Shown piece after piece: positions 700-62,475 of a stretch of 64,000 nt of DNA; position 1 is the first letter of the stretch; each line of letters starts with the position of its first letter. The notes under the pieces were generated by a model. It was not told where the DNA came from, made no database searches, and saw only the letters and a program-made list of their open reading frames with translations. Source of the stretch: Macrostomum lignano (lineage: Eukaryota); the NCBI GenBank assembly GCA_002269645.1, contig NIVC01001701.1:31899-95898 (forward strand), read 5' to 3'. The translations under genes were made by a program, and so were the position numbers.

Positions 700-1790
700 C
701 AGCTCCCGGCGATTGCGAATCAGCTCCCTGTCGCTTTGAGTCAGCAGTTGATAGGTGCGGCGCTCCGGGTCAGCTTGCGTCACAACAGCTGGCTCCCATC
801 TGAAACCGTGCCGAAAACAAACTGCATCTCCCCGATTCAGTGTTGAGAGCGGTCGGGCTTGCTGGTCGTAGTGCCGTTTTTGAGCAGCCTGCAGCGGGGC
901 TTTGGAGAATCCGGTTGTTTAGTCTTTGAGCAGTGCCTCCTCACCCGCTGGCAGCTTCGTCCGAATCAACCGACCGAACATGAGCTCGAACATGAGCTCG
1001 CTGGGGCTGGTGCTCGTACCGCTAATTGGCGAAGCTCGATATTCCATTAGCGCAATTTCGGACCGATTGGCTTTCCTCAGGATGTTCTTTGCCACCTTGA
1101 CTGCCTTCTCAGCCATTCGTTGGACTGCGGGTATCCGGGTGACGAGCGCGTGTGCACGAAACCAAACTGTGCAGCAAACTCTTGAAACTTAAACGAGCTG
1201 AATGGGGGCCCATTGTCACTGACCAGCTCTTCGACGATACCGAACCTGGCGAACATTGACTTAATTCGAGCAATCACCAGGTCAGCTCCAGACTGTTGAC
1301 CTAATTTGTTCGATCCAGTTGCTGTAATAGCAGCTGGTAACGACTAGCCACTTGTCGCCATTGAAGTCCAGCAGATCACAACCAACCTTGGTCCATGGTG
1401 CATTCGGAATCTGATGGTTCAACAGCGGTTCCTTTGGGTTGGCCGGCTGAAACGTCTGACATGCGCCGCAGTGCTTCACGAAGTTCTTAATGCCCTCTGA
1501 CATGCCTAGCCAGTACAGAATTTGAAGCCTCCGTATTGCCCGCGCCAGCATGACCGTGGTATAAAATTGGCAGAATCTTCTGCCGCAACGATGCTGGAAC
1601 AATAACGCGATCCAACTTCATCAGCACGCCATCATTGTTGGTCAAGTCCTCCTTGAAACTCCAATACTGACGGACAGAGTGGCAAATGTTCCGAAAGTTA
1701 CTTGGCCAACCCGCCTGAACCAACCGGGCTACAGCCCTCAAGTCTGAATAGTAGTAGGAAAATGGTACAGTCTGGTGCACGTCCACGTCC
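700..1790 (-). mobile_element. Degraded Ty3/gypsy LTR-retrotransposon pol fragment (integrase zinc finger, core and C-terminus), frameshifted
   Basis: Consecutive minus-strand frames give LYHGHAG, YWLGMSEGIKNFVKHCGACQ (HHCC zinc finger), PWTKVGCDLLDF, ELVSDNGPPFSS..F (DDE core), SPGYPQSN, and ALMEYRASP..SPSELMF..GRLIRTKLP. These motifs are typical of K02A2.6-like gypsy integrases. They are spread over several frames, so the copy is non-functional. Confidence 0.9.
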
Positions 1791-6400: not shown

Positions 6401-6868
6401 TGTTGTTTTGCATCACTGCCTGTTGTTTTGCATCACTGCCTGTTGTTTTGCGTCACTGCCTGTTGTTTTGCATCACTGCCTGTTGTTTTGCGTCACTGCC
6501 TGTTGTTTTGCATCACTGCCTGTTGTTTTGCGTCACTGCCTGTTGTTTTGCATCACTGCCTGTTGTTTTGCATCACTGCCTGTTGTTTTGCATCACTGCC
6601 TGTTGTTTTGCATCACTGCCTGTTGTTTTGCATCACTGCCTGTTGTTTTGCAAAACTGCCTGTTGTTTTGCATCACTGCCTGTTGTTTTGCAAAACTGCC
6701 TGTTGTTTTGCATCACTGCCTGTTGTTTTGCATCACTGCCTGTTGTTTTGCATCACTGCCTGTTGTTTTGCATCACTGCCTGTTGTTTTGCAAAACTGCC
6801 TGTTGTTTTGCATCACTGCCTGTTGTTTTGCATCACTGCCTGTTGTTTTGCATCACTGCCTGTTGTTT
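6401..6868 (+). repeat. 20-bp minisatellite TGTTGTTTTGCATCACTGCC, about 23 copies
   Basis: Read directly; CATC, CGTC and CAAA variants occur. Confidence 0.97.
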
Positions 6869-7047
6869 CATAGAACAAACATTTTCCCAGCCTCTTGACA
6901 CGCCAAGAATAGACAATAGTTAAAAAGCTGGAAGCTGAGGATTTGCCAAGCCAGTCAGTTGGCTGCATCACTAGCGGGTGTATTTCCACTTCTGTGCTTC
7001 GATGCGTTCAAACAAAACGAGCCGACGCTCTCAGCAGGCCGCCCGCG

Positions 7048-7817
7048 TCACGGCGTGTCGGACCGCTTGCCGAACCTGCAAATTGCAGCGGTGCGAGATT
7101 GTTGCTGAGGATCTCGGGATCACCCATAGCTCGGGGCATTCGAGTTCTCCAGCTCTTCCCGCCCACACCGCCACTGAGGCGTCAAGCTACAGAGGCGGAG
7201 GCTGAATGCTGTGCTGAGCACAGGCAAAGCAGCAGAGTCTGCTATTGTTTCTGGTGCAGCTTCTGACGAGCGCGTCTGGTCGTATCTGGTTTTTTGTCTC
7301 AATCCTTTTCTCAAATATCCTCTTTCTAGCTGACTCAGCCGTAAATATCTCCCTGCCAACTCATGGGTAAAATGAGAGTTTTAGGGCCGGGGAACCTACT
7401 GCTACATTTCCATGTACACCCCTCAAAGACCAGGGCCGCAGAGCTTTCTTCCCTGCTTCAACTGGCCAAAGCAGCACCCTAAGCATCAAGAGCGCTGCTA
7501 TCAAGACACATCCAATTCACCTCTAGATTACTCAACCAGCCCTGCACTTCAACTCAAAGTAACATCTTAAATTTCCGCACAAACCAGTGGCTCACCTGGG
7601 CCGAGCGATGAGGCTCATGTAGCTGCGCAGGTTCTTCAGGTATTCCTTGAACTCCAGCTCCGCGGGCCGGCTTCTGCACGCGGTCGCTCGGGTCGCTCAG
7701 CTGCTCGCGTTTGTCCCAGGCCGGGCTGGCCCCACCGCCCGAGGCCTGCAGCAGCACCAGCAGGTGCACGAGTCCCAGCAGGATGAGGGCCCTGGAACCG
7801 GTTGTCAATGCCGACAT
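7048..7817 (-). CDS. npf: Neuropeptide Y/F (NPF) precursor, 2 coding exons, with a 1-nt frameshift in the present sequence
   Basis: Exon 1 (7817-7596) encodes a signal peptide MSALTTGSRALILLGLVHLLVLLQASGG.., then a KR site and EQLSDPSDRVQKPA. After a frameshift it reads AELEFKEYLKNLRSYMSLIARP-AG|gtgag. The intron is 7595-7076 (tttgcag acceptor). Exon 2 (7075-7048) is G TTC GGC AAG CGG TCC GAC ACG CCG TGA, giving RPRF-G-KR. The YL..L..Y...RPRFG motif and the intron within the last Arg codon are hallmarks of NPY/NPF genes. Confidence 0.9.
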
Positions 7818-7925
7818 TGCTCAGAAGGTTCTTAACGAATTAGGAGAGAAGGTTCCGGACTTCCGAATCTCTGTTGCGGGGCTGTAGTTTGGAGGGCTGC
7901 AGCGGCGGTAACGGGTTGCACCAGC

Positions 7926-7970
7926 TTTAAATACCTGTGCACTTCCCCGCGCTTGTGCGCAGCCAATCGG
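7926..7970 (-). promoter_or_regulatory. Putative NPF core promoter (TATTTAAA box, with a CCAAT box upstream)
   Basis: The minus strand reads TATTTAAA at about 7926-7933, roughly 110 nt upstream of the ATG. AGCCAATCGG lies at 7961-7970. Confidence 0.5.
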
Positions 7971-8091
7971 AAATTCTCGTTAAATATTTAATAACGGGAA
8001 AAGCATTTTCAGCCTCGCTCGCTTCCTTAATTTTCCAATCTGGAAGCTGTTTGCGACATTGCGACGCCATTGCTACACCAGACTCAGCTAA

Positions 8092-8478
8092 TGGCTGGAC
8101 CAGACTTAACTAATGGCTGGACCAGACTTAACTAATGGCTGGACCAGACTTAACTAATTGCTGGACCAGACTTAACTAATTGCTGGACCAGACTTAACTA
8201 ATTGCTGGACCAGACTTAACTAATGGCTGGACCAGACTTAACTAATGATTGAACCAGACTTAACTATAATGGCTGAACCAGACTTAACTAATTGTTGAAC
8301 CAGACTTAACTAATGGCTGGACCAGACTTAACTAATGGTTGAACCAGACTTAACTAATGGCTGGACCAGACTTAACTAATGGCTGGACCAGACTTAACTA
8401 ATGGCTGGACCAGACTTAACTAATGGCAGGACCAGACTTAACTAATGGCTGGACCAGACTTAACTAATGGCTGGACCA
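8092..8478 (+). repeat. 22-bp minisatellite TGGCTGGACCAGACTTAACTAA, about 17 copies
   Basis: Read directly. Confidence 0.95.
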
Positions 8479-8818
8479 GTCTTATAGTTAATTGCTGGTC
8501 GAGACTTGGCTAAATTGATAAAATTTGAGTAACGGACTCGCAGCGTTGAACTCATCTGGACTGCTATGCAACACCAGCAACACAATATATAAGTTGTAAG
8601 CCAGTCACGCAAGTCTGAGAGGCAGACAACGGACTGGCATGCTATTGGCAAGCCGGGAAGCCTTTAGCGAGAGTGATCGAGCAGTGCATTTTTGCCTTTG
8701 AGGATGAGATAAACTGAAAATGTAAGCGTGCAATGTCCTATAAAGCATTGAAATACAATATAGTTTTGGGCGAGCCAGGATTGCATGGTCGGGTTCCTCA
8801 TAGTTCGGAATTTGACAT

Positions 8819-9705: not shown

Positions 9706-11411
9706 ACATGGCCGAAATGAAGAAGTTTTGAGCTGTGGAAATGGTTGGCTCGGGAGTATTTGGTGATTTCGAGCCTGTGAAATTTTGAGGTGGTTATCAA
9801 AAGATTAAACTCTGTTTTCGACAGTGTACATGACATACAGCCAGTTTAAGGAGAATTAGTTCAATACTGAAGTACAACACATCTACAGTGTACTCGATCA
9901 GTACATGCATTTCCATTCCCGTGCATCGCGCACGCCCCTGCACACTCGAAGCTCGCACTACTGCAGATATTCAAGGTAATGCCAAGGAACTGCGAGCTCT
10001 TGCTAAATGAAATTAGGCCGCAAAATGTGCATAGTGTAACGTACAAAGTGCAGTTGGAAAACTCATTATTTGTGGCTTTAAAATGAGACTGAGCAAGAAT
10101 AATGCCGGGTTTTTGCGTTAAGGATTTTGATGAATAATTACATAGTTCTTTGGCCGTGTAACTTCTTAATATCGCTTAGAGTCTTTATGAAGGTCTCTGA
10201 AGAAAATATGGCTCACAGCTTCATCTCGGCTAGATGTACATTTCGGCTATTTTTGTGCAATAGCTGTCATTAAGCTGTCATTTATATTACAAACAGATAT
10301 GCAAGTTTATATTTGTCATGATCCCTTTGGAATCGAGCATTTTCGGGAATAAAATAGCTGCTGACAAATACCCAAAACCATGTTTACAATATTTTACTGC
10401 GTTTGATCAATCAAGATTACATGTAGTAACGAGCACATGCAATGTATGCGTAAAGAGCATTTGAGCAGTGCACTGATCAAAGACGCCTATTGGCGCAACT
10501 GCAGACAATGACCACCCTTGTCTCACGGCGCTAGCTTCTATAGGTATTAGACTCAGTGTCTCATGCAACTACCATTCCATCAATAAGCGCGCAGTCAAGA
10601 GACACACATGCCATACATGTACATGTTACATATCATGATGTACATGTAGTAGGAGTACCATATTCCATATCTGATTATAAGCCTGCAACGACGTTTTATG
10701 TCGCGTTCTCGCGCAGCAGCTCTGCAAGATCTCTTCTCATTATCGTAGCTTTTATAGTGAATTGATTTTTTGGAGTACATGTAGATGGCAGTGGTGGTGA
10801 ACAACAGCGCCTACATTGAGAATAGTAAGAATTAAAACTCTTGGATGTAAGAAGCTAAAATCCACGAAAAAGAAGCAAACTGAAATATTTCTTTTTGCCC
10901 GACGTTGATCGTTCCAACGGCAACAAGACGATCTGCTAAAAACAATAGCAAAAAGTTCCTGTTCTGACTGATGCAAGTAAATACAAGCAATTTAATTTGA
11001 AAATGAAATATTAATTTTAATTTTTTTACCAAGCCGGACTGACTTGATGTTTAAATAAATGCTAAGATATAGTGCAAAGTATCGGATGAAGATTAATAAT
11101 ATCAAAAGTACAAGTTTGCTTTATGTAACATCCATACCCCACTAGCATCATCGAAGTCGTTTTTTGTTCTTCCCGGCGTAAAATATATCAGGCGCACCTT
11201 TTTAAAACCGTGCTCATTGGCCGTTGAACTTTCAAACATCTCTTAACTTTTCTTCTTAACAATCCAAACTGTGGTGAATCACTCACTGAAATGTCAATAT
11301 TGTCCGTATAAAATTTCCATTCAAGCAAGATCTACACATTGATATATAACAAATCTAAACCGTGTAGCTATTTAAAGTTTTAAATCAAGTGAAGTGCCTC
11401 AAATTTCCAAA

Positions 11412-17400: not shown

Positions 17401-20400
17401 TCTAAAAAATTAATGAAATTACCCGAAATTTGGAATTTGGTTTGGGTACCCGAAACAGCACTAGCTGGGCATGCCTAGGTGCTCTCATGCATGATGCTGA
17501 CACCCTATTAAACTCAATACTCCATCCAATCACTGCGCCAGCAAAACGCGGCCCTGTTCAGGAAGATCTTGGAGCTTCCACGCAGTCAGAGCGCCGATTC
17601 CCGATCGAAGCGACTCGCTTCCCAGTTTGTCGGCCGGCTGTTCAAGGACTTTCCGGAGGACCAGCCGGCAGCATTCGAAGCCATGGTTGACCTTGTTGAG
17701 GATGACGACTTGAATGTTCGGAAGCAGGCGATTAGTGACTTGCCTAAGCTGTGCAAGGATGTGCCAGTGTACGTTGCAAAGGTTACTGACCTGCTCGTCC
17801 AGATGCTGCAATCTGACGATCCACAGGTTGGTTTGAGTTTCTGTTGCTGATCAATGCAGCGGTTGATGCAGAGTCCAGCCTGGGAACAGCGGTTGATGCA
17901 TAACTCAGGGCTGGGAGCAGCAGTTAATGCAGAATCCAGGGCTGGGAGCATCAGTTAATGCAGAATCCAGGGCTGGGAGCAGCGGTTGATGCAGCATCCA
18001 GGGCTGGGAGCAGCAGTTGATGCAGAATCCAGCGATTGGAGCAGCAGTTGATGCAGAATCCAGGGCTGGGAGCAGCAGTTGATGCAGAATCCAGGGCTGG
18101 GAGCAGCAGTTGATGCAGAATCCAGGGCTGGGAGCAGCAGTTGATGCAGAATCCAGGGCTGGAAGCAGCAGTTAATGCAGAATCCAGGGCTGGGAGCAGC
18201 AGTTAATGCAGAATCCAGGGCTGGGAGCAGCTGCAACATCTTCCAAATCCCCAACCCCGCTGAAAAACTCGCCAGGAGCAGCCCCTGGTGAACAACGCTC
18301 TGTCGCAGACTTTGACTGGACACCCGGCCGAGGCCCTCACCGGGCTGTTCAACCAGCTGACTCACGAGGAGGCCTCCGACCTGACCCGGGAGAGAGCGCT
18401 GCGCTTTCTAACCGCCAAGTTGGCACACCTGGCGCTGACGCCGCCACAGGAGGAGCTGCTGTCTCGCCTGCTGATCGATGAGCTGCTGTACGACGTGAGC
18501 GAGGACGAGTTCACCACGGCCGTCAACCTGCTGGCCGGGCTTGGCTGCATGCGCGGAGCAGCGGGCCGGCAGCGCCTGGTTGACGCCGTCTGCCAGCAGG
18601 CCGACCTGGCGGTCCCCTTTGATCCGGCCAGCCCAGCCGATGTGGCCCGCCTGAGCGAATGCGCCAGGATGGCTGCCAAGCATATGGGGGTGCGCATCCA
18701 CCCATGACTTTGGGGTTCCTGTTTTTCCTGCTTGTTCACACTATTTTATCCGTGTCTCCACATGTATCACATTATATTCTGTGTTTTACCTGTGTCTTCA
18801 CTTGTCATTTCCTGTCTTCACTTGTGTCATTTCCTGTGTCTTCACTTGTGTCATTTCCTGTGTCTTCACTTCTCATTTCTGTGTCTTCACTTGTGTCATT
18901 TCCTGTGTCTTCACTTGTGTCATTTCCTGTGTCTTCACTTGTGTCATTTCCTGTGTCTTCACTTGTGTGTCATTTCCTGTGTCTTCACTTGTGTCATTTC
19001 CTGTGTCTTCACTTGTGTCATTTCCTGTGTCTTCACTTGTGTGTCATTTCCTGTGTCTTCACTTGTGTCATTTCCTGTGTCTTCACTTCTCATTTCTGTG
19101 TCTTCACTTGTGTCATTTCCTGTGTCTTCACTTGTGTCATTTCCTGTGTCTTCACTTGTGTCATTTCCTGTGTCTTCACTTGTGTCATTTCCTGTGTCTT
19201 CACTTGTGTGTCATTTCCTGTGTCTTCACTTGTGTCATTTCCTGTGTCTTCACTTCTCATTTCTGTGTCTTCACTTCTCATTTCTGTGTCTTCACTTGTG
19301 TCATTTTCTGTGTCTTCATTTGTCATTTCCTGTGTCTTCACTTGTGTCATTTCCTGTGTCTTCACTTCTCATTTCTGTGTCTTCACTTGTGTCATTTCCT
19401 GTGTCTTCACTTGCGTCATTTCCTGTGTCTTCACATGTGTCATTTTCTGCGTTTTCACTTGTCATTTCCTGTGTCTTCACTTGTGTCATTTCCTGTGTCT
19501 TCACTTGTGTCATTTCCTGTGTCTTCACTTGTGTCATTTTCTGCGTTTTCACTTGTCATTTCCTGTGTCTTCACTTGTGTCATTTCCTGTGTCTTCACTT
19601 GTGTCATTTCCTGTGTCTTCACTTGTGTCATTTTCTGCGTTTTCACTTGTCATTTCCTGTGTCTTCACTTGTAATTTCCTGTGTCTTCACTTGTGTCATT
19701 TCCTGTGTCTTCACTTGTCATTCCCTGTGTCTTTACCTTATATTTTCCTGTGTATTTCCATTTCACTGTCTTTCTCTTTACTGGATTTTTTCCTGCGCTC
19801 CTGCGTATTCCAGGGAAAACAGGTAAGCTCGTCACCCCTTATCCGGTGTTTTTATTTTGGTCTTCAATGTTTCTACCGGTGTCTTAGAAACTCGACACTT
19901 GTTTATCTGTCCCATATTTTTTCAAGAGTATGTACGTCCTTACCTATCTCTGGCTGTCTTTACATGTAACACTGGTGTGTTGTTCCTCTTTTCCATTGAT
20001 ATCAGCCTGATGCAACCCTTCCCAACTCAGTCACACACCCATTTCCTTGTACAGCGCAACGTCAGCGCCAAGGCTCTGCTGGTGTACTACCTGGACCGGG
20101 TGGTGCCCAGCATCGACCTGGTGGACGACTCGGCTTCCGGGCCTGGCCTGGCCGACTCGCCCCGCCTCGGCCTGCTGCGTCGCCTGGCGGAACTGAGCTC
20201 TGCTGCCGGTGAGGATTTGGGATCAGTAATGGCTGTATTGGGATCAGTGTTCAGTGCTAATTAGCTCTCATTTCACCTGTCAGGCTCCTCATTCGCGGTC
20301 ACTGACAAGCAGCTTTCGGCACTGCTTGACCGCCTGCTCGACCGCCTGCCGCTGCCGCCGACGCCGCCGCCAACGCCAATGGCGACTTCGTCAAACGATA

Positions 20401-21295
20401 ACGAGCAGGCCGAGACTGACAAGGTGCCGGAGGAGGGTGAGATTGCGCCAGCAGTCGGCGAGCCCGAGCTGAACTTCTCTCAGATCGAGTGCCTGTTGTT
20501 CGCCTTCCACCGCCTGGCCAAGACCAACTCGGACTTCCTGACCGCCTGTCCCGACCGACTGGCCGACTTTGCCAAGCGGATCGGCTATCTGAGCCAGTGA
20601 GGCTTCTGTTTCAGTCTGCATCACTGCTAAGAGTCCTATCTCAAATCCTCAATCTTTCTGAGATCCTCAACTTGACCTCGCAATCTTGATTCTCACTAAT
20701 TATTCAGCCTTATTTGTCCTAAATTTTACTGCATGTCTTCATCTCGTTACTTCGCCAAACCAAACTCAGAGCCAACCAAGTGTACCTGCGATCGCTGCGG
20801 TCAGCAGTTCGAGCTCCATTACGTGCGGAGGACGCCGTCCCCACCCCTGCTGCAGCCGTTGAAGATGCCGCCCCATCGACTCAGCCGGATGCGAGCGACG
20901 ACGCCGAGAAGGCGGAAAAAGCTGAGGAACCCAAAGCTGCTGAGCCGCCGATCGCAGACCCCGCCCGCCTTCGCGAGGTCGCCCTGGCCACCGCCGAGAA
21001 CATCGCCCTGCTGGCTCGCGACCTGTCCAGATCGCCGCCCTCCTACCGGGCTGAGCTGGCCGTCTCCTGTCTGTCTTGGCGCCAGTTGGCCGCCTCCGGC
21101 GCCGACCGGCTCGGCAAGCGGCGCGGCGAAGTCAGCGACGACGAGGAAGAGGATCGCGGCGGAGCCCGCCGACGCTTTGCGGGGGATCAGCGGAGCTCTG
21201 ATCGGAGGGCGCGGGACCGATTTGGCGGCGGTGGCGGCGGGATGCGAAGCCGTCGCGGTGGCGGCGGTGGCGGATGGCGAAGCAACCGGTGGTAG
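11412..21295 (+). CDS. API5: Apoptosis inhibitor 5 (API5/AAC-11), 6 coding exons, 593 aa
   Basis: Exons are 11412-11501, 17542-17826, 18276-18689, 20055-20208, 20284-20596 and 20770-21295. All are GT-AG and phase-compatible (1782 nt). Peptides [78 protein letters not shown] and PPSY match API5, and there is a C-terminal RGG-like tail. Exon 1 is the least certain. Confidence 0.92.
11890..12060. mobile_element. Degenerate hairpin MITE in API5 intron 1
   Basis: The arms CCATTTCTATTGGCAACACATAC..ACATGTAAGTTGCTA and TAGCGACTTACATGT..TGTTGCCAATATAAATGG are inverted. The left end CATGCGCAAC is shared with the MITE at 14443. Confidence 0.55.
12249..13220 (-). mobile_element. Internally deleted Tc1/mariner transposon, about 200-bp TIRs, TA TSD
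   Basis: The ends are TA|CGAGGGGTGTCCAAAAAGT... and ...ACTTTTTGGACACCCCTCA|TA. The interior minus strand encodes an N-terminal transposase remnant, [32 protein letters not shown] and [18 protein letters not shown] (HTH). No DDD domain is present. Confidence 0.92.
13639..15113. mobile_element. Non-autonomous hAT-type DNA transposon
   Basis: The TIR is CAGTGATGGGCA / TGCCCATCACTG. An exact 8-bp TSD AAAATGAC lies at 13631-13638 and 15114-15121. There are subterminal TAGCG/CGCTA repeats. Confidence 0.9.
14443..14730. mobile_element. 288-bp MITE nested in the hAT element
   Basis: TA|CATGCGCAAC ... GTTGCGCATG|TA. Confidence 0.75.
16650..16862 (+). repeat. 30-bp tandem repeat CAAAGTGGCTGTTACTGAAATGGCTATTAC, about 7 copies; inverted relatives at 13585-13625 and 15125-15180
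   Basis: Read directly. It is probably the right arm of an older foldback element whose left arm was split by the hAT insertion. Confidence 0.85.
17851..18235 (+). repeat. 31-bp minisatellite in API5 intron 2
   Basis: Unit GATGCAGAATCCAGGGCTGGGAGCAGCAGTT. Confidence 0.93.
18790..19730 (+). repeat. About 24-bp minisatellite in API5 intron 3
   Basis: Unit TGTCATTTCCTGTGTCTTCACTTG with small indel variants. It generates the spurious long ORFs at 18659-19969. Confidence 0.97.
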
Positions 21296-31400: not shown

Positions 31401-32702
31401 TCAGGCCTCCGCTGCTTCTCCCTTCCCCCGTTCCCTCAGGCCTCCGCTGCTTCTCCCTTCCCCCGTTCCCTCAGGCCTCCGCTGCTTCTCCCTTCCCCCG
31501 TTCCCTCAGTCTCTATAGCAATACTAATTCCATGTGATGTCTGAGCCAGCAGCAGCTTTGCCCACCCACGCCGCCCCCGCCAGCCGTGGACTGCTTGACC
31601 AGCCGCATCGCTGAGCTGGAGAAAAAGTTCGCCGCCCTCTCCGCCGGCGGCCCGGCCAAACCCGCCGCCCCGCCAGCAGCCGCCAAGCAGAAGAACGGTG
31701 GCGACGACGACGACGTGGACCTGTTTGGTTCCGACGACGAGGAGGCGGACGCCGAGGCCGAGCGGATCAAGCAGGAACGGCTGCAGGCCTACCAGGAGAA
31801 AAAGGTGAGGCTTAGCTTCGCCATTGAGTGCATGCTGTGGGGCTTGCAGTTCGAGACAACCGTTTGTTAATTTGAGTGCCAGACTGGACCTGCTGAGACT
31901 GAGACTAAAGCCATCAGGCTGAGACTAGAGCCCTCAGGCTGAGACTAGAGCCCTCAGGCTGAGACTAGAGCCCTCAGGCTGAGACTAGAGCCCTCAGGCT
32001 GAGACTAGAGCCCTCAAGCTGAGACTAGAGCCACCAGTATGAGATTAGAGACACCAGACTGAGACTAGAGCCTTCAGGCTGAGACTAGAGCCCTCAGGCT
32101 GAGACTAAAGTCACAAGGCTGAGACTAGAGCCCTCAGGCTGAGACTAGAGCCCTCAGGCTGAGACTAGAGCCCTCAGGCTGAGACTAGAGCCCTCAGGCT
32201 GAGACTAGAGCCCTCAGGCTGAGACTAGAGCCCTCAGGTTGAGACTAGAGCCACCAGTCTGAGACTAGAGCCCTCAGGCTGAGACTAAAGTCACAAGGCT
32301 GAGACTAGAGACACCAGACTGAGACTAGAGCCCTCAGGCTGAGACTAAAGTCACAAGGCTGAGACTAGAGCCCTCAGGCTGAGACTAAAGTCACCACCAC
32401 CCCGCCGCCCGCAGTCAAAGAAGCCGGCCCTGGTGGCCAAGAGCAGCATCGTGCTGGACGTGAAGCCGTGGGATGACGAGACTGACATGGCTGAGATGGA
32501 GCGCTGCGTCCGCAGCATCGCAACCGACGGGCTGCTGTGGGGCGCCAGCAAGCTGGTGCCGGTAGGCTACGGCATCAAGAAGCTGCAGATCGGCTGTGTT
32601 GTCGAGGACGACAAAGTCGGCACCGACTTCCTGGAGGAGGAGATCACCAAGTTCGAGGATCTGGTCCAGTCCGTGGACGTGGCGGCCTTCCAGAAGATTT
32701 GA
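28429..32702 (+). CDS. EEF1D: Translation elongation factor 1-delta-like (eEF1B GEF subunit), 4 coding exons, 228 aa
   Basis: Exons are 28429-28542, 31245-31308, 31584-31804 and 32415-32702 (687 nt, phase-compatible). The protein has a leucine zipper [21 protein letters not shown], the acidic [13 protein letters not shown] motif and the GEF domain [18 protein letters not shown]...[13 protein letters not shown]...[10 protein letters not shown]. There is no GST-like N-terminus, favouring delta over beta. Confidence 0.9.
28735..29070 (+). repeat. 28-bp minisatellite CAGTTGCTGGGCCAGCCTCCCAGATCCT (dispersed family, locus 1)
   Basis: Read directly; the same unit occurs at about 46570 and 54500. 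Confidence 0.95.
29545..30260 (+). repeat. 24-bp minisatellite CAGCCCTTCAGCTCCCTCCACCCT
   Basis: Read directly; it lies in EEF1D intron 1. Confidence 0.97.
30723..30825 (+). repeat. 47-bp tandem duplication, about 2 copies
   Basis: ACCCAGCTGCTCGGTAGACCTAGGGTCATTCGGGGTCAGTT starts at 30723 and again at 30770. Confidence 0.85.
31345..31510 (+). repeat. 35-bp minisatellite in EEF1D intron 2
   Basis: Unit CCCCGTTCCCTCAGGCCTCCGCTGCTTCTCCCTTC. Confidence 0.92.
31895..32392 (+). repeat. 20-bp minisatellite GAGACTAGAGCCCTCAGGCT in EEF1D intron 3
   Basis: Read directly. Confidence 0.95.
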
Positions 32703-42554: not shown

Positions 42555-43790
42555 TGGGAGATTCTCTGAGGTGGATAAGGGAGATTCTGTGGGGTGGATG
42601 ACGGAGATTCTGTGGTGTTGGTGAGGGATATTCTGTGAGGTTGGTGAGGGAGATTCTGTGGTGTTGGTGAGGGATATTCTGTGAGGTTGGTGAGGGAGAT
42701 TCTATGGAGTGGATGAGGGAGATTCTGTGGGGTGGATGAGGGAGATTCTGTGAGGTTGGTGAGGGAAATTCTATGGAGTGGATGAGGGAGATTCTGTGGG
42801 GTGGATGAGGGAGATTCTGTGAGGTTGGTGAGGGAAATTCTATGGAGTGGATGAGGGAGATTCTGTGGGGTGGATGAGGGAGATTCTGTGGGGTGGATGA
42901 CGGAGATTCTGTGAGGTGGATGAGGGAGATTCTGTGGGGTGGATGACGTAGATTCTGTGGGGTGGATGAAGGAGATTCTGTAGGGTTGATGAGGGAGATT
43001 CAATGGGGTGGATGAGGGAGATTCTGTGAGGTTGGTGAGGGAGATTCTTTGGGGTGGATGACGGAGATTCTGTGGGGTGGATGAGGGAGATTCTGTGAGG
43101 TTGGTGAGGGAAATTCTATGGAGTGGATGACGGAGATTCTGTGGGGTGGATGAGGGAGATTCTGTGAGGTTGGTGAGGGAAATTCTATGGAGTGGATGAG
43201 GGAGATTCTGTGGGGTGGATGAGGGAGATTCTGTGAGGTTGGTGAGGGAGATTCTCTGGGGTGGATGACGGAGATTCTGTGGTGTTGGTGAGGGAGATTC
43301 TGTGGGGTGGATGAGGGAGATTCTGTGAGGTTGGTGAGGGAGATTCTGTGGGGTGGATGACGGAGATTCTGTGGTGTTGGTGAGGGAGATTCTGTGGGGT
43401 GGATGAGGGAGATTCTGTGAGGTTGGTGAGGGAGATTCTCTGGGGTGGATGACGGAGATTCTGTGGTGTTGGTGAGGGAGATTCTGTGGGGTGGATGAGG
43501 GAGATTCTGTGGTGTTGGTGAGGGAGATTCTGTGGGGTGGATGAGGGAGATTCTGTGAGGTTGGTGAGGGAAATTCTATGGAGTGGATGAGGGAGATTCT
43601 GTGGGGTGGATGAGGGAGATTCTGTGAGGTTGGTGAGGGAGATTCTCTGGGGTGGATGACGGAGATTCTGTGGTGTTGGTGAGGGAGATTCTGTGGGGTG
43701 GATGAGGGAGATTCTGTGAGGTTGGTGAGGGAGATTCTGTGGGGTGGATGACGGAGATTCTGTGGTGTTGGTGAGGGCAATTCTGTGAGT
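42555..43790 (+). repeat. About 23-bp compound minisatellite (GGATGAGGGAGATTCTGTGGGGT / GGTGAGGGAGATTCTGTGAGGTT variants)
   Basis: Read directly; it explains the 423-aa ORF. Confidence 0.95.
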
Positions 43791-48946: not shown

Positions 48947-51900
48947 TCAGGTAGCCGCAGACTGGGTGCTGAGGCGGCTGATCACGCGGATGAGGGAGGT
49001 GTTGTCTGCTTTCAGCTTGCTGTTCTCCAGCCTGAGCTTGTTCAGCTCCGCCTCCGCCTGGGCGGCCTGCAAATTTGAGGAACAGGTTTGGGAGATGCGG
49101 CCAGTGAGGCTGCAGAAGCTTGGCTGACTGCACGCAACTGTGGAATGCTGGGGAATGAGTGGACCAGGCATAGGCGTAGAAAAACATTGAGAGAGATCGA
49201 ATTAAAAACGGGAAGAGGTGACAGGGTAGAGAGAGGATGGAGATGGAAGAGAGGAGAGGGTAGAGATGGGAGAGGAGAGGGTAGAGATGGAAGAGGAGAG
49301 GGTAGAGATGGAAGAGGAGAGGGTAGAGATGGAAGAGAGAGGGTAGAGATGGGAGAGAGAGGGTAGAGATGGGACGGAGGAAAGGGTAGAGATGGGAGAG
49401 AGAGGGTAGAGATGGGAGGGAGGAGAGGGTAGAGATGGGAGGGAGGAGAGGGTAGAGATGGGAGAGAGAGGGTAGAGATAGGAGGGAGGAGAGGGTAGAG
49501 ATGGGAGGGAGGAGAGGGTAGAGATGGGAGGGAGGAGAGGGTAGAGATGGGAGGGAGGAGAGGGTAGAGATGGGAGGGAGGAGAGGGTAGAGATGGGAGA
49601 GAGGGTAGAGATGGGAGAGAGAGGGTAGAGATGGGAGAGGAGAGAGTAGAGATGGGAGAGGAGAGGGTAGAGATGGGAGAGAGAGGGTAGAGATGGAAGA
49701 GGAGAGGGTAGAGATGGGAGAGAGGGTAGAGATGGGAGAGGAGAGGGTAGAGATGGGAGAGGAGAGGGTAGAGATGGGAGAGGAGAGGGTAGAGATGGGA
49801 GAGGAGAGGGTAGAGATGGGAGAGGAGAGGGTAGAGATGGGAGAGGAGAGGGTAGAGATGGGAGAGGAGGGTAGAGATGGGAGAGAGGGTAGAGATGGGA
49901 GAGAGGGTAGAGATGGGAGAGGAGAGGGTAGAGATGGCGCTCAAGAATCGCCAATGCTGCAAATCCTCACCCTCTCCTGAGCCTCGTAGCCGGCCAGACT
50001 CCTGTTGATGACGGCCCGCTGCTGCAGCTGCTGCTCCTGCTGCTGCTGCTGCAAGGTTTCGAGCTCGCGCCGCATGCGGTCCATCTCCCGCCTCATCCGG
50101 CCGTTCTCCCGCTCCAGCTGCTCAGAGCGGATTTTCTCAGTCTCGAACATTCTGCGATAGTCCGTGGCCGGGGCTGCCGAGCTGCCGCCATGGAATGAAT
50201 CCGGCCTGACGCGGAAGGAGCTGCTGCCAACCTGCAAGGATTGGCTGGGGTTACCGTCAATAAGCCCGATGCCCGAACCCGAGCTGAGCCCGCACTCAGC
50301 CCGGTTGCCGAATTTCCCCCAACTTTCAATCACTTGCATTGGCCCGCCCCTGGCCTGACACATCTCATCCCCTGGCCTGACACATCTCATTCCCTGTCCT
50401 GACACATCTCATTCCCTGGCCTGACACATCTCATCCCCTCGCCTGACACATCTCATTCCCTGTCCTGACACATTTCATCCCCTGGCCTGACACATCTCAT
50501 CCCCTCGCCTGACACATCTCATCCCCTGTCCTGACAAATCTTATCCCCTGGCCTGACACATCTAATCCCCTGGCCTGGAATCTCATTACCTGACCTGACG
50601 CACAAAATCCCACCAAACTAATACCATTCAGAGCTCTGCCATTTCCAATTGATCCCCTATCCAACAACTGCCACGTGCCACCCAGCCCAACGCACCTCTT
50701 CAGTCCGGCTCGGCCAGGCAGACGCAGTCGTGGTAGCAGCCGGAGGCTCCTCGGAGCCCGCCGCCAAACCGGCCTTGCTGACTGCGGCAGACGACTGCTG
50801 CTCGTCAGCGGCAGCGGGCGGTTGGTTGTCCACGGAGTCGGCGGGCGCCGCCCGGGAGGCCATCAGCTTCCGCGCCTGCTCCACTTCGTCTGGGGTGACG
50901 CCCTGCGTCAGCCGCTTTGTGGCGCGATTGTGGCGCGAAATCCGGCGCCGCTCGGTCTCGGACTCCTCGGCCTTCTCCTTCTCCATGATGACGGACACAC
51001 GCCGGTGCGAGGCCGCGGCCGGCGGCTGCCGCTGCGGCGACAGGGAGCTGCGGCTGCCGTTCTGGTCTGAAGCCACGGGCGCCACCACCGAGTTGGCGAG
51101 CCGACCGCCTGCCGTGCCGCGCAGCCGCTCGAGTCGGTCCGCTGGCGCCTCCTGCTGGGACAGCCGGCTGCCGGCTGGCGGCTCCGTCTGCGGATTTTGG
51201 GGGTTGGGGAAAGCCTGAGGTCAGGTGGTTGGGGAAGGCCTGAGGTCAGGGGGTTGGGGAAGGCCTGAGGTCAGGGGGTTGGGGAAGGCCTGAGGTCAGG
51301 GGGTTGGGGAAGGCCTGAGGTCAGGGGGTTGGGGAAGGCCTGAGGTCAGGGGGTTGGGGAAGGCCTGAGGTCAGGGGGTTGGGGAAGGCCTGAGGTCAGG
51401 GGGTTGGGGAAGGCCTGAGGTCAGGGGGTTGGGGAAGGCCTGAGGTCAGGGGGTTGGGGAAGGCCTGAGGTCAGGGGGTTGGGGAAGGCCTGACGTCAGG
51501 GGGTCGAGAAGAGGGCGAGGTATGGCGACGGGGGCAACGACCACACGTGCAGTCGACCCACCTTGGGAAACACCAGCGGACTATTGAAGGAGGCCGACAG
51601 CCCGACACTGCCGGAAGCCGGCTTTGTCCCGCCAGCCGCGGACGAAGACATGGTCAAAGCGTCGGCCGCTGACCGGACGCGACCGCCGCCGATGCCCGCC
51701 CTGGCCTGAGGCTGGGTGTTCTGCCTGACTGCCACCGATGAGGAGCTGCCAGTTGAAGTCTCCTGAAGGCTCTCCATGCGGGTGAGAATGCTCTGCAGGT
51801 TGGGACATAACCAGGTGGGAAAACAATGACGCCTGACACAGACACCAGGGATGGTCTGACACAGACACCAGGGATGGGTCTGACACAGGGATCAGGGATG

Positions 51901-54900
51901 GGTCTGACACAGGGATCAGGGATGGGTCTGACACAGGGATCAGGGATGGTCTGACACAGGGATCAGGGATGGTCTGACACAGGGATTAGGGATGATCTGA
52001 CACAGGGATTAGGGATGGGTCTGACACAGGGATCAGGGATGGGTCTGACAGAGGGATTAGGGATGGTCTGACACAGACACCAGGGATGGGTCTGACACAG
52101 GGATCAGGGATGGGTCTGACACAGGGATCAGGGATGGGTCTGACACAGGGATCAGGGATGGTCTGACACAGGGATCAGGGATGGTCTGACACAGGGATTA
52201 GGGATGATCTGACACAGGGATTAGGGATGGGTCTGACACAGGGATCAGGGATGGGTCTGACAGAGGGATTAGGGATGGTCTGACACAGGGATCAGGGATG
52301 GTCTGACACAGGGATTAGGGATGGGTCTGACACAGGGATCAGGGGTGGGTTTGACACAGGGATCAGGGATGGGTCTGACACAGGGATCAGGGATGGGTCT
52401 GACACAGGGATCAGGGATGGGTCTGACACAGGGATCAGGGATGGGTCTGACACAGGGATCAGGGATGGGTCTGACACAGGGATTAGGGATGGGTCTGACA
52501 CAGGGATTAGGGATGGTCTGACACAGGGATTAGGGATGGGTCTGACACAGGGATCAGGGATGGGTCTGACACAGGGATCAGGGATGGGTCTGACACAGGG
52601 ATCAGGGATGGGTCTGACACAGGGATCAGGGATGGGTCTGACACAGGGATCAGGGATGGGTCTGACACAGGGATCAGGGATGGGTCTGACACAGGGATCA
52701 GGGATGGGTCTGACACAGGGATCAGGGATGGGTCTGACACAGGGATCAGGGATGGGTCTGACACAGGGATTAGGGATGGTCTGACACAGGGATTAGGGAT
52801 GGGTCTGACACAGGGATCAGGGATGGGTCTGACACAGGGATTAGGGATGGTCTGACACAGGGATTAGGGATGGGTCTGACACAGGGATCAGGGGTGGGTC
52901 TGACACAGGGATCAGGGATGGGTCTGACACAGGGATTAGGGATGAACCAGAACATTCAGCTGTCAATATTGCTTGGACAGGCGCGCAAGAAAAAACACGC
53001 TCGTATTTTAGAGGCTCGAGAAAGCTATTGATCGCATTTCGAAGAAAGCATTACTAAGCGAAACGATTGTCGTTAGAGAGGCCAGAAAGTACAGTGCTTC
53101 AGGCTGACTAGCTAAAAGTACATTTCGAGTTAAGGATTTGCTAAGACTACTGGATTTTAGACAGGACAATCCGATTACATTGAATTTAGTTCAGAAACGG
53201 TGTACGAGTATTGCAAGAGTAACCATTTCTAGACAAGTATAACAGTGAAAATGAACAAAATATGTGCGGCCGAATCAGTTCTCTACAGAAACTACCGAGC
53301 ATTCAAAGACACTGTCAAACTACCGTATTTACTCTGACTACCCACACCCTACCATACCTACTCTGACTACCCCACACCCTACCATACCTACTCTGACTAC
53401 CCACACCCTACCATACCTACTCTGACTACCCCACACCCTACCATACCTACTCTGACTACCCCACACCCTACCATACCTACTCTGACTACCCCACACCCTA
53501 CCATACCTACTCTGACTACCCCACACCCTACCATACCTACTCTGACTACCACACACCCTACCATACCTACTCTTACTACCCCACACCCTACCATACCTAC
53601 TCTGACTACCCCACACCCTACCATAACTACTCTGACTACCCACACCCTACCATACCTACTCTGACTACTCCATACCCATACCCTACCATACCTACTCTGA
53701 CTACCCCACACCCTATCATACCTACTCTGACTACCCACACCCTACCATACCTACTCTGACTACCCACACCCTACCATACCTACTCTGACTACCACACACC
53801 CTACCATACCTACTCTGACTACCCCACACCCTACCATACCTACTCTGACTACCCCACACCCTACCATAACTACTCTGACTACCCACACCCTACCATACCT
53901 ACTCTGACTACTCCATACCCATACCCTACCATACCTACTCTGACTACCCCACACCCTATCATACCTACTCTGACTACCCACACCCTACCATACCTACTCT
54001 GACTACCCACACCCTACCATACCTACTCTGACTACCACACACCCTACCATACCTACTTGACTATCAAAACTGCTGTCTACACCAGACCCTACCTTAAATG
54101 CATGGTTTAACTATAAGACACAGCCAAATTCCAACATGCTGAAAGGCCCAAAACGCAGACTGGTAGTCTGGGATAGAAAGAAAGTTTTCACTACAAAGAA
54201 CAGCTGATCAGGAAACAGGCAACAAATGGCGATGCAAAACTCAACAAACGAATGCATGCGAAAATGCACCTGAACTTCGTACACATGTAATAAAAGCACC
54301 ATGTATACAATATTAGTGCACTGTATAGTACTGGTTGTCAAGGAAACACGAGAGGCCTGTTGGTCACTTACATCCTCGGGCACAGTTTGCACTGGCGTGG
54401 CCTGAGCGAAATAGGGGAATTCTGAGTATAATTCCTGGCGACTGCGTTTAAATAGTGATACTGGGCAGTGCCTCATTGTGTGCGTTCATGATGCAGGAGG
54501 ATCAGGGAGGCTGGCTCAGCAACTGAGGGTCTGGGAGGCTGGCCCAGCAACCGAGGATCTGGGAGGCTGGCCAGGCAACTGAGAATCTGGGAGGCTGGCC
54601 CAGCAACTGAGGATCAGGGAGGCTGGCCCAGCAACTGAGGGTCTGGGAGGCTGGCCCAGCAACTGAGGGTCTGGGAGGCTGGCCCAGCAACTGGGGGTCT
54701 GGGAGGCTGGCCCAGCAAATGAGGGTCTGGGAGGCTGGCCCAGCAACTGAGGATCAGGGAGGCTGGCCCAGCAACTGAGGATCAGGGAGGCTGGCCCAGC
54801 AACTGAGGGTCTGGGAGGCTGGCCCAGCAACTGAGGGTCTGGGAGGCTGGCCCAGCAACTGGGGGTCTGGGAGGCTGGCCCAGCAAATGAGGGTCTGGGA

Positions 54901-61771: not shown

Positions 61772-62475
61772 GATTTTAATAATAAAATAACACTAACAGG
61801 CTTAGAATCGTTAGATGCTAAAAAAAGAACATTGGCTGAAGTTAGGAAAAATAGAGCTTTTTTACGCAATAAGCCACTAAAACCTTTAACACCAGGGGTA
61901 AACTTTTAAGTCTAGCTCTGTTAAATTGTACTAGGCCTAGGCCTACCTTCTTGACATTCGATCCAACGTGATAAGATCGACCACGGGGACCACCTTGGCT
62001 TTCCTCTCAGTATCAAAAAAGGTTTATTATTAATTTCTTGAAAAGTACAAAGAATCAGCAGAACTATACTAAAGTAGGCCTACAAATAAAGAATAACGAT
62101 TCAATTCACTGCGCAATGATCCCATATCCATGCATTCATGCAGACTAAGTGACTGTATTAGGAGATGAATTGAAACTAGCTTTCTATGAAAATAAAGAAT
62201 GGTCCCTTTTGATATTCACTTTTGATACAACTTTATAAATATAGCTGTAAAAACGAGCGGCATAAATATAAAAACATTTGTGTAAACCATTATAAAAAGT
62301 CCTTATCAATAAAAATATTTGTTAGATTAATCTATTCTATATTTAATTTCGCGTGAAATCTATTTGACCTTCCATTGGTTTTTCAGTTCCAGTTCCCGAT
62401 AAGATAAAAATAACAAAAAGATCGATTTAGCAGAAAACACTTGAATGTAAAACGATTTTTTAGTCGAAACTCAAA

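What the first reader, a model, noticed from the sequence alone, without database searches (positions are those of the whole stretch)
7048..7817. Hidden NPY/NPF neuropeptide gene with the conserved RPRF intron and a single-base frameshift
The ORF track shows only an 87-aa nonsense product. Changing frame at AAG CCG GCC C|GCG GAG (about 7660-7695) and splicing 7595-7076 gives signal peptide, KR, an approximately 38-aa peptide EQLSDPSDRVQKPA(A)ELEFKEYLKNLRSYMSLIARPRF, then G-KR-SDTP*. The amidation signal, dibasic sites and the intron after nucleotide 2 of the last Arg codon follow established NPY/NPF architecture. Whether the frameshift is an assembly error, a null allele or a pseudogenised paralogue is inference. 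An automated annotation would probably miss this gene.
Basis: partly seen in the sequence, partly recalled or inferred. Interest (0 to 1): 0.78.

Follow-up and report, generated by a model that had tools for sequence, protein, structure and literature searches.

The report
Frameshifted copy of flatworm NPF gene
This is a real two-exon neuropeptide F (NPY-family) gene of the flatworm Macrostomum lignano whose reading frame is broken in this sequence by two missing G bases; near-identical copies are already catalogued, so it is an ordinary gene that is either mis-assembled or a dead copy.

Summary
On the minus strand, ATG 7817 to AG|gt at 7596/7595, a 520-nt GT-AG intron (7595-7076), and exon 2 (7075-7048) encode a signal peptide, KR, an NPF-like peptide ending RPRF, then G-KR-SDTP-stop. 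The intron sits after base 2 of the last Arg codon. The signal peptide and the peptide are in different frames.

The repaired precursor matches Macrostomum lignano proteins. A0A1I8JDA1 (83 aa, "Pancreatic hormone", PF00159) is an intact copy at 1e-41. A0A1I8GYL4 is a mis-framed gene model. The paralogue Mlig021284 has three intact annotated copies with the same intron.

The intact copy reads KPGPRELEF, so the window lacks two single G's (GG runs at 7668-7667 and 7661-7660), not one extra base. The peptide is 39 aa: EQLSDPSDRVQKPGPRELEFKEYLKNLRSYMSLIARPRF-amide, with Tyr at -10 and -17.

A0A1I8GYL4's source DNA appears identical to the window apart from one of those G's. Run length at this GC-rich site therefore differs between otherwise identical records. 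I favour a long-read consensus error (about 0.55) over a real null copy in this polyploid genome (about 0.4). No reads were available to decide.

The gene is already known, and interest is low.

The parts
7951..7967 (-). Conserved upstream block ATTGGCTGCGCACAAGC (inverted CCAAT-like); putative promoter element
   Evidence: Identical except for one base in all three copies of the paralogue Mlig021284 (alignments). Function is inferred.
7925..7933 (-). TATA-like TATTTAAAG
   Evidence: Conserved as TTTTAAATG in the paralogue loci. It lies about 40 nt upstream of where the transcript-derived partial model PAA94719 (P0127) begins in the paralogue. Function is inferred.
7596..7817 (-). Coding exon 1: ATG, signal peptide, spacer, KR, and NPF peptide up to the first two bases (AG) of the last Arg codon. 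The frame is broken at 7660-7668.
   Evidence: tblastn of P0001 and P0003 onto the window.
7743..7817 (-). Signal-peptide coding part (M1 to about A25; cleavage could lie as late as A30 at 7728)
   Evidence: One basic residue (R9), then a hydrophobic core at residues 10-23 with an 11-residue Kyte-Doolittle mean up to 2.9, then small residues QASGGGA. No signal-peptide predictor was available, so this is inferred.
7764..7766 (-). CAC (His18); the only amino-acid difference from the intact copy A0A1I8JDA1 (Tyr18) outside the indel site. Useful as a copy marker.
7707..7712 (-). AAA CGC = Lys-Arg, the dibasic site preceding the peptide
   Evidence: Conserved as KR-EQ in the paralogue.
7660..7668 (-). 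Frame-break site. Window GGCCCGCGG versus intact GGGCCCGCGGG. One G is missing from the run at 7668-7667 and one from the run at 7661-7660.
   Evidence: Back-translation of P0001 (KPGPRELE) and the 2-G repair, which gives an 83-aa ORF. The source of P0003 lacks only the first G.
7076..7595 (-). Intron, 520 nt, GT-AG, phase 2, inside the codon of the Arg in the C-terminal Arg-Phe
   Evidence: The same junction is used by the gene models of P0001, P0003 and the annotated paralogues at loci L001-L003.
7486..7508 (-). Conserved intronic block TGTCTTGATAGCAGCGCTCTTGA. The core GATAGCAGCGCTCTTGA is invariant in all four loci.
   Evidence: Function unknown. No Rfam match in the window.
7048..7075 (-). 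Coding exon 2: G (third base of Arg), Phe, Gly (amide donor), Lys-Arg, Ser-Asp-Thr-Pro, TGA
6883..7047 (-). 3' untranslated region, partly conserved with the paralogue
   Evidence: blastn of L001 10808-10906 against window 6988-6883, 71% identity.

Best explanation
Window 7048-7817 (- strand) is one genomic copy of a Macrostomum lignano neuropeptide F (NPY/NPF-family) prohormone gene with two coding exons.

In its intact form it encodes an 83-aa precursor. Signal peptidase removes about 25-30 residues. A prohormone convertase cuts after Lys36-Arg37 and at the Lys-Arg that follows Gly77. A carboxypeptidase trims that basic pair, and peptidylglycine alpha-amidating monooxygenase uses Gly77 to leave a C-terminal Phe-amide. 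The product is the 39-residue peptide EQLSDPSDRVQKPGPRELEFKEYLKNLRSYMSLIARPRF-NH2, which would act on an NPY/NPF-type G-protein-coupled receptor.

In this window the sequence CCGGGCCCGCGGGAG reads CCGGCCCGCGGAG. Two single G's are absent from two short G runs 7 nt apart, so the signal peptide and the peptide are out of frame.

I think the two missing G's are most likely consensus errors of a long-read assembly at a very GC-rich, palindromic site, and that the locus is intact in the animal.

Shown: the gene's identity, its structure and the exact lesion. Inferred: the processing steps, the receptor and the cause of the lesion.
For: Identity:
- The repaired precursor hits M. lignano A0A1I8JDA1 at E 1e-41 (95% identity), A0A1I8GYL4, and BOX15_Mlig021284g2.
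- Pfam PF00159 matches at E 4.6e-6.
- The best solved-structure hit is 1K8V, named 'NEUROPEPTIDE F'; 8 of the other 11 hits are NPY, PYY or PP family.
- Tyr lies at -10 and -17, and the peptide ends RPRF-G-KR.
- The intron is phase 2 in the Arg codon, as described for the family (PMC7314547, PMC2953531).
- The same gene structure is annotated in three intact paralogue copies.

Lesion:
- Inserting two G's restores an 83-aa ORF identical to A0A1I8JDA1 except H18Y.

Artefact:
- Both differences are one-base shortenings of G runs within a 15-nt stretch that is 14/15 G+C.
- A0A1I8GYL4 matches the window at 100% over 57 codons read in a non-coding frame and over the rest of its length, yet carries one of the two G's. 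Run length at this site therefore differs between otherwise identical records.
- Nothing else in the gene is damaged: ATG, splice sites, dibasic sites, Gly, stop and upstream motifs are all intact.
- The published assemblies derive from PacBio reads. ML2 used PacBio only. The genome holds 180-312 Mb of blocks at least 95% identical, which makes polishing harder (PMC5730564).
- A G run upstream of the paralogue also differs (8, 9 or 10 G) among its three copies.
Against: - No reads could be examined, so the cause of the lesion is not shown.
- M. lignano is a recent polyploid with redundant copies, so loss of one copy is plausible.
- Both known His18 records are frameshifted and share the first missing G. 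The only intact record carries Tyr18. That is what a real deletion in one copy lineage would produce.
- GenBank's annotation of the Pilon-polished Mlig_3_7 assembly contributes three intact proteins for the paralogue but none for this gene type.
- The API5 and EF-1-beta/delta exons elsewhere in the window show no frame breaks at Pfam resolution, so the window is not riddled with indels.
- I could not establish which assembly the window comes from.
Confidence: 0.55

Rival explanations
1. The two missing G's are real. This is a pseudogenised or null copy of the NPF gene in a neopolyploid genome that carries several redundant copies. It yields only the 87-aa nonsense product, or a transcript that is degraded, while the Tyr18 copy supplies the peptide.
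For: Both records carrying His18 (this window, and the source of A0A1I8GYL4) are frameshifted and share the first missing G. The one intact record carries Tyr18. No protein of this gene type comes from the GenBank annotation of the polished Mlig_3_7 assembly, whereas three intact paralogue copies do. Other coding exons in the window show no frame breaks. Copies of a locus in this genome differ by about 1-4% and by about 1.6 one-base indels per kb, so real indel differences between copies exist.
Against: A second real deletion 7 nt from the first would be an unlikely coincidence, given that the two records are otherwise identical over about 260 nt. Both changes are G-run shortenings in an extreme GC context, which is the typical signature of long-read consensus errors. 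There is no other decay in the coding sequence, splice sites or promoter blocks.
Confidence: 0.4
2. The sequence is correct and the copy is still functional, because the frame is restored at the RNA or translation level (a small alternative intron, editing, or ribosomal frameshifting).
For: None found here. The only basis is that the rest of the gene is undamaged.
Against: In the peptide's frame there is a TGA upstream and no ATG between it and the peptide. By my reading of the sequence, the only GT...AG pair spanning the site (GT at 7678-7677, AG at 7653-7652) is 27 nt. That is too short for an intron and is a multiple of three. No such mechanism is known to me for neuropeptide genes.
Confidence: 0.02
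3. A chance resemblance: no gene is present.
For: None.
Against: E 1e-41 to an annotated M. lignano NPY-family protein. Promoter, exon, intron-boundary and 3' UTR blocks are conserved with three annotated paralogue loci. The bare split motif arises in only 3 of 300 shuffles.
Confidence: 0.01

Closest known systems
Macrostomum lignano A0A1I8JDA1 (UniProt, machine-named 'Pancreatic hormone', 83 aa, PF00159)
   Same: Same gene. The sequence is identical to the two-G-repaired window product except His18/Tyr18, with the same exon junction (RPR|FGKRSDTP).
   Different: It is intact (KPGPRELEF). The window lacks two G's and is out of frame.
Macrostomum lignano A0A1I8GYL4 (UniProt, 87 aa, partial gene model)
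   Same: Its source DNA appears identical to the window. 57 codons read in a non-coding frame, and the whole C-terminal part, match at 100%.
   Different: It carries one G more than the window (in the run at 7661-7660), so its model joins a wrong-frame N-terminus to the correct peptide.
Macrostomum lignano paralogue Mlig021284 g1/g2/g3 (PAA59922, PAA87384, PAA94719; A0A1I8G5Z9)
   Same: 61% identical precursor. It has the same signal peptide core, KR-EQ start, KEYLxNLRxYMxLIARPRFGKRxDTP end, phase-2 intron, conserved donor-proximal and intronic blocks, and conserved upstream ATTGG and TATA-like motifs.
   Different: The peptide is shorter (31 aa after KR). It sits at a different genomic location with different neighbours. 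All three copies are intact.
Flatworm NPFs: Moniezia expansa NPF (PDB 1K8V) and Schmidtea mediterranea npy genes
   Same: Long peptides (39 aa here; I recall 39 aa for Moniezia). The 1K8V alignment shows PSD...YL..(I/L)..Y..(I/L)I.RPRF. They share the Gly amide donor, the dibasic site, and the intron inside the Arg codon (PMC2953531 Fig. 2D legend; PMC7314547, citing Mair et al. 2000).
   Different: The C-terminus is ARPRF rather than the GRPRF seen in 1K8V. A short spacer ending in KR separates the signal peptide from the peptide. The C-terminal flank is only SDTP, with no C-flanking peptide and no second coding intron, which PMC7314547 calls typical of NPY/NPF genes.
Vertebrate NPY / PYY / pancreatic polypeptide (Pfam PF00159)
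   Same: The C-terminal half aligns to profile positions 16-36. PYY, NPY and PP chains are among the best solved-structure hits. The intron position is the same.
   Different: It ends in Phe-amide rather than Tyr-amide. The Pfam score of 27.0 bits is just under the 28.7-bit gathering score, and only the C-terminal half matches (profile positions 16-36).

Membership tests
NPY/NPF neuropeptide family | C-terminal RxR(F/Y) followed by a Gly amide donor and a basic cleavage site | tested here: met
   ARPRF-G-KR, read across the splice. Criterion from PMC4990251.
NPY/NPF neuropeptide family | Tyr residues at positions 10 and 17 from the C-terminus (invertebrate NPF signature) | tested here: met
   Tyr at -10 and -17 in the peptide. 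Criterion from PMC4990251.
NPY/NPF neuropeptide family | Intron between bases 2 and 3 of the codon for the Arg of the C-terminal RF/RY | tested here: met
   CCC AG|gtgagc ... tttgcag|G TTC. The same position is used in three annotated paralogue loci. Criterion from PMC7314547 and PMC2953531.
NPY/NPF neuropeptide family | One continuous reading frame from the signal peptide through a single ~36-40-aa peptide | tested here: not met
   In the window as given, the signal peptide (frame A) and the peptide (frame B) are out of frame. The feature is met only after adding two G's, as in the intact copy A0A1I8JDA1.
NPY/NPF neuropeptide family | Match to the Pfam profile PF00159 (Hormone_3) above its gathering score | tested here: inconclusive
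   E 4.6e-6, 27.0 bits against a 28.7-bit cut-off, profile positions 16-36 only. Precomputed PF00159 hits are on record for the near-identical P0001 and P0003.
NPY/NPF neuropeptide family | [quoted passage not shown] | tested here: not met
   Only SDTP follows the KR, then the stop codon. The paralogue ends the same way, in PDTP. Described as typical in PMC7314547.
NPY/NPF neuropeptide family | Expression, processing to an amidated peptide, and activation of an NPY/NPF-type receptor | not testable with these tools
   No reads, transcripts or peptidomic data were available. Transcript-derived models exist for the paralogue only (P0127 includes translated 5' UTR).
NPY/NPF neuropeptide family | PP-fold: N-terminal proline-containing stretch packed on an amphipathic helix | not tested
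   The peptide has Pro6, Pro13 and Pro15, but no structure prediction was run.

The most novel reading that the evidence does not exclude
The two missing G's are real. This would then be a freshly inactivated copy of a neuropeptide gene in a neopolyploid flatworm: a dated, copy-resolved example of the first step of gene loss after genome duplication. The His18 copy lineage would be decaying by successive deletions at one GC-rich palindrome while the Tyr18 copy stays intact.
Probability: 0.4. Interest if true: 0.25.

Novelty: already known. Interest (0 to 1): 0.15.

Why it matters
It matters little for biology and somewhat for annotation.

The NPF gene family of M. lignano is already in public protein sets, though only under machine-given names. 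I found at least three types: this one, Mlig021284, and the three-peptide precursor Mlig009822.

The case shows how a 250-nt neuropeptide gene disappears from an annotation because of one or two bases at a GC-rich run. It also shows that the family's conserved intron position lets such genes be recovered.

For people working on M. lignano, the window gives:
- the correct mature peptide, a 39-mer with a calculated monoisotopic mass of 4691.48 Da as the amide;
- a copy marker (His18/Tyr18);
- conserved upstream and intronic blocks that could serve as a neuron-specific promoter for transgenesis.

By analogy with planarian npy-8 (PMC2953531), NPF signalling might influence reproductive maturation. 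Nothing here tests that.

Tried and rejected
- Exact-product look-ups for P0001, P0003 and the window's 87-aa ORF found no contigs. I could therefore not fetch the DNA of the intact copy or name the window's assembly.
- I spent two homology searches on neighbouring genes to identify the assembly. The API5 exon gave no hit at E <= 1e-10. For the EF-1-beta/delta exon no M. lignano protein was identifiable among the hits (best 88% identity). These results say only that the collection's coverage of this genome is patchy.
- The exhaustive profile-free search with P0001 found only 4 relatives. Short peptides are hard to reach by sequence search.
- dN/dS between this gene and its paralogue over 75 codons was 0.78, which is too little data to show constraint.
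- Literature string searches: LIARPRF gave 0 papers, and ARPRF gave only unrelated or arthropod hits. McVeigh et al. 2009, the flatworm neuropeptide survey that I recall included M. lignano, is not held, so I cannot say whether this peptide was printed there.
- Rfam found nothing in the window.
- I considered a mini-intron bypassing the frameshift. By my reading, the only GT...AG pair spanning the site is 27 nt, so I rejected it.

Full report
**1. The observation**

- An ATG at 7817 opens frame A: MSALTTGSRALILLGLVHLLVLLQASGGGASPAWD-KR-EQLSDPSDRVQKPA...
- In the given sequence this frame runs on into nonsense and stops at 7554. That is the 87-aa ORF listed.
- Frame B carries ...ELEFKEYLKNLRSYMSLIARP, followed by AG|GTGAGC. 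Exon 1 ends at 7596.
- After 520 nt comes TTTGCAG|G TTC GGC AAG CGG TCC GAC ACG CCG TGA (exon 2, 7075-7048).
- The split codon AG|G is Arg, so the spliced end reads ...ARPRF-G-KR-SDTP-stop.

Chance does not explain this. Each half of the split motif occurs exactly once in the 64-kb window, in the right order on one strand. Only 3 of 300 dinucleotide-preserving shuffles produced any such ordered pair, even without asking for the rest of the peptide.

**2. What it is**

A search with the repaired precursor returned three proteins, all from the free-living flatworm Macrostomum lignano.
- A0A1I8JDA1: 83 aa, 95% identity, E 1e-41, PF00159, machine-named "Pancreatic hormone".
- A0A1I8GYL4: 87 aa.
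- BOX15_Mlig021284g2: 80 aa, 61% identity.

Other evidence points the same way.
- Pfam PF00159 (the NPY, PYY and PP family) matches the repaired product at E 4.6e-6. The score is 27.0 bits, just under the 28.7-bit gathering score.
- Among solved structures the best match is 1K8V, named "NEUROPEPTIDE F". Eight of the other 11 hits are PYY, NPY or PP family chains.
- The peptide has Tyr at positions 10 and 17 from the C-terminus and ends RPRF-Gly-dibasic. That is the published NPF signature (PMC4990251).
- The intron lies between bases 2 and 3 of the codon for the Arg of the terminal Arg-Phe. This is the conserved hallmark of NPY/NPF genes across phyla, planarians included (PMC7314547, citing Mair et al. 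2000; PMC2953531, Fig. 2D legend).

The gene identification is secure.

**3. The lesion**

The intact copy instead reads VQKPGPRELEF.
- Back-translated, that is AAG CCG GGC CCG CGG GAG CTG GAG.
- The window has AAGCCGG-CCCGCGG-AGCTGGAG. One G is missing from the run at 7668-7667 and one from the run at 7661-7660.
- Restoring both G's gives a 252-nt coding sequence. Its 83-aa product equals A0A1I8JDA1 except His18 in place of Tyr18.
- The mature peptide is then 39 residues: EQLSDPSDRVQKPGPRELEFKEYLKNLRSYMSLIARPRF-amide.

A0A1I8GYL4 is informative.
- Its first 57 residues are a translation of the window in a third, non-coding frame, at 100% identity from 7830 to 7660. This stretch includes 5' untranslated sequence.
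- Its remainder is the correct peptide, also at 100% identity.
- Identity in a frame under no selection implies near-identical DNA.
- That record therefore equals the window plus one G, in the run at 7661-7660.

Three states are now known: intact (Tyr18), one G missing (His18), and two G's missing (His18, this window).

**4. Conservation of the gene structure**

The paralogue Mlig021284 has three annotated, intact copies in assembly GCA_002269645.1 (loci L001, L002 and L003). These features are shared with the window:
- the upstream ATTGGCTGCGCA.AAGC block and a TATA-like element;
- the signal-peptide core, about 47 nt of it identical at the DNA level;
- the KR-EQ start of the peptide;
- the KEYLxNLRxYMxLIARPRFGKRxDTP end;
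- the donor context CCCAG|GTGAGCCACT;
- an invariant intronic block GATAGCAGCGCTCTTGA;
- a block ahead of the acceptor;
- part of the 3' UTR.

One paralogue model (PAA94719) includes translated 5' UTR. It therefore looks transcript-derived, and it begins about 40 nt downstream of the TATA-like element.

A third NPF-like gene type exists in M. lignano. Mlig009822 encodes three tandem ...SRPRFGKR peptides. The only relative found outside M. lignano is a krill precursor built the same way.

**5. How it most likely works**

These steps are inferred from established prohormone biochemistry and were not tested here.
- Co-translational removal of the signal peptide. The hydrophobic core spans residues 10-23.
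- Convertase cleavage after Lys36-Arg37 and at the Lys-Arg that follows Gly77.
- Carboxypeptidase trimming of that basic pair.
- Amidation, using Gly77 as the donor.
- Action of the RPRF-amide peptide on an NPY/NPF-type GPCR.

Compared with typical family members, the precursor is minimal. A short spacer precedes the peptide, only SDTP follows it, and there is no second coding intron (compare PMC7314547).

**6. Assembly error or real null copy?**

I could not reach reads or the DNA of the other copies, so this stays a judgement.

For an artefact:
- Both changes shorten G runs inside CCGGGCCCGCGGGAG, which is 14/15 G+C and contains overlapping palindromes. That is the classic failure mode of long-read consensus calling.
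- Two otherwise identical records disagree on one of the runs.
- Nothing else in the gene is damaged.
- The published assemblies rest on PacBio reads: ML2 on PacBio alone, Mlig_3_7 on Canu plus Pilon. The genome has 180-312 Mb of duplicates at least 95% identical (PMC5730564).
- A G run upstream of the paralogue also varies (8, 9 or 10 G) among its three copies.

For a real lesion:
- The species is a recent polyploid with redundant copies.
- Both His18 records share the first missing G, while the intact record carries Tyr18.
- GenBank's annotation of the polished assembly contributes no protein of this gene type, yet three for the paralogue.
- The API5 and EF-1-beta/delta exons in this window show no frame breaks at the resolution I could apply.
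- Copies of one locus genuinely differ by about 1-4% and by about 1.6 one-base indels per kb.

I put the artefact at about 0.55 and a real null copy at about 0.4.

**7. Context in the window**

The gene sits between two minisatellites: a 20-mer array at 6401-6868 and a 22-mer array at 8077-8507. The window is crowded with more than 30 such arrays, consistent with the repeat content reported for this genome (PMC5730564).

Other genes seen:
- a retrotransposon integrase relic at about 700-1617 (-), with frame breaks;
- API5 at about 17.5-21.3 kb (+);
- EF-1-beta/delta at about 31.5-32.7 kb (+);
- a coiled-coil gene at about 34-36.7 kb (-);
- an ankyrin-repeat gene at 57.5-61.8 kb (-), which I judge MYPT/PPP1R12-like by eye.

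The neighbours differ from those of the paralogue loci.

**8. Verdict**

The gene, its exon structure, the family and the phylum are all right. The repair is wrong in detail: two G's are missing rather than one base being extra, and the peptide is 39 aa, not about 38.

The gene is not new. An intact near-identical copy and a mis-framed model of apparently the same sequence are in UniProt, and paralogues are in GenBank, all under machine-given names.

Novelty: already known. Interest: low, 0.15. The only open point is whether this copy is truly dead, which a k-mer count in existing short reads would settle.

Noticed in passing
window 1-64000 (e.g. 6401-6868, 8077-8507, 18789-19759, 42556-43787, 51833-52944): More than 30 minisatellite arrays (periods 12-70 nt, up to about 80 copies) fill much of the window. 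They generate most of the long 'ORFs', and several lie inside introns of real genes, for example 17856-18231 between two API5 exons.
   Followed up: partly
window 7486-7508 (-), and L001/L002/L003 near position 10290: An intronic block is conserved between the two NPF gene types: the window and L001 share TGTCTTGATAGCAGCGCTCTTGA, and the core GATAGCAGCGCTCTTGA is invariant in all four loci although the rest of the intron has diverged. It may be an intronic regulatory element. There is no Rfam match.
   Followed up: partly
window about 7735-7781 (-) versus L001 about 10040-10086: About 47 nt of signal-peptide coding sequence are identical at the DNA level between the two NPF gene types, although dS over the whole gene is about 0.26. 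This suggests gene conversion or a nucleotide-level constraint.
   Followed up: no
L001, L002, L003 about 9850-9870 (upstream of the paralogue): A G homopolymer just upstream of the TATA-like element has 9, 10 and 8 G's in the three copies within one polished assembly. Run lengths are thus unstable or unreliable in this genome.
   Followed up: partly
window 17512-21292 (+): An API5 (apoptosis inhibitor 5) gene is present, with exons matching Pfam PF05918 positions 20-110, 112-253, 304-353 and 403-532. A 130-aa exon found no protein at E <= 1e-10 in the 5.8-billion-protein collection, so this gene seems absent from the M. lignano protein sets held there.
   Followed up: partly
window 31538-31867 and 32349-32699 (+): Exons of translation elongation factor EF-1-beta/delta appear intact. 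The best database hit was 88% identical and no M. lignano protein was identifiable among the hits.
   Followed up: partly
window about 700-1617 (-): A retrotransposon integrase relic is split over at least two reading frames, probably more by eye (Integrase_H2C2 in 1285-1617, rve core in 1080-1343, further pieces downstream). Whether the frame breaks are decay or base-calling errors was not examined.
   Followed up: no
window 57543-58082 and 61499-61792 (-): Ankyrin-repeat exons that resemble a myosin-phosphatase-targeting (PPP1R12/MYPT-like) subunit. This was judged by eye only.
   Followed up: no
proteins P0005, P0130, P0131 (BOX15_Mlig009822 g1-g3) and P0004 (Meganyctiphanes norvegica): M. 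lignano has a third NPF-like gene type whose precursor carries three tandem peptides ending SRPRF-GKR. A krill 'Neuropeptide F' precursor has the same three-copy layout. Multi-copy precursors are unusual for the NPY/NPF family.
   Followed up: partly
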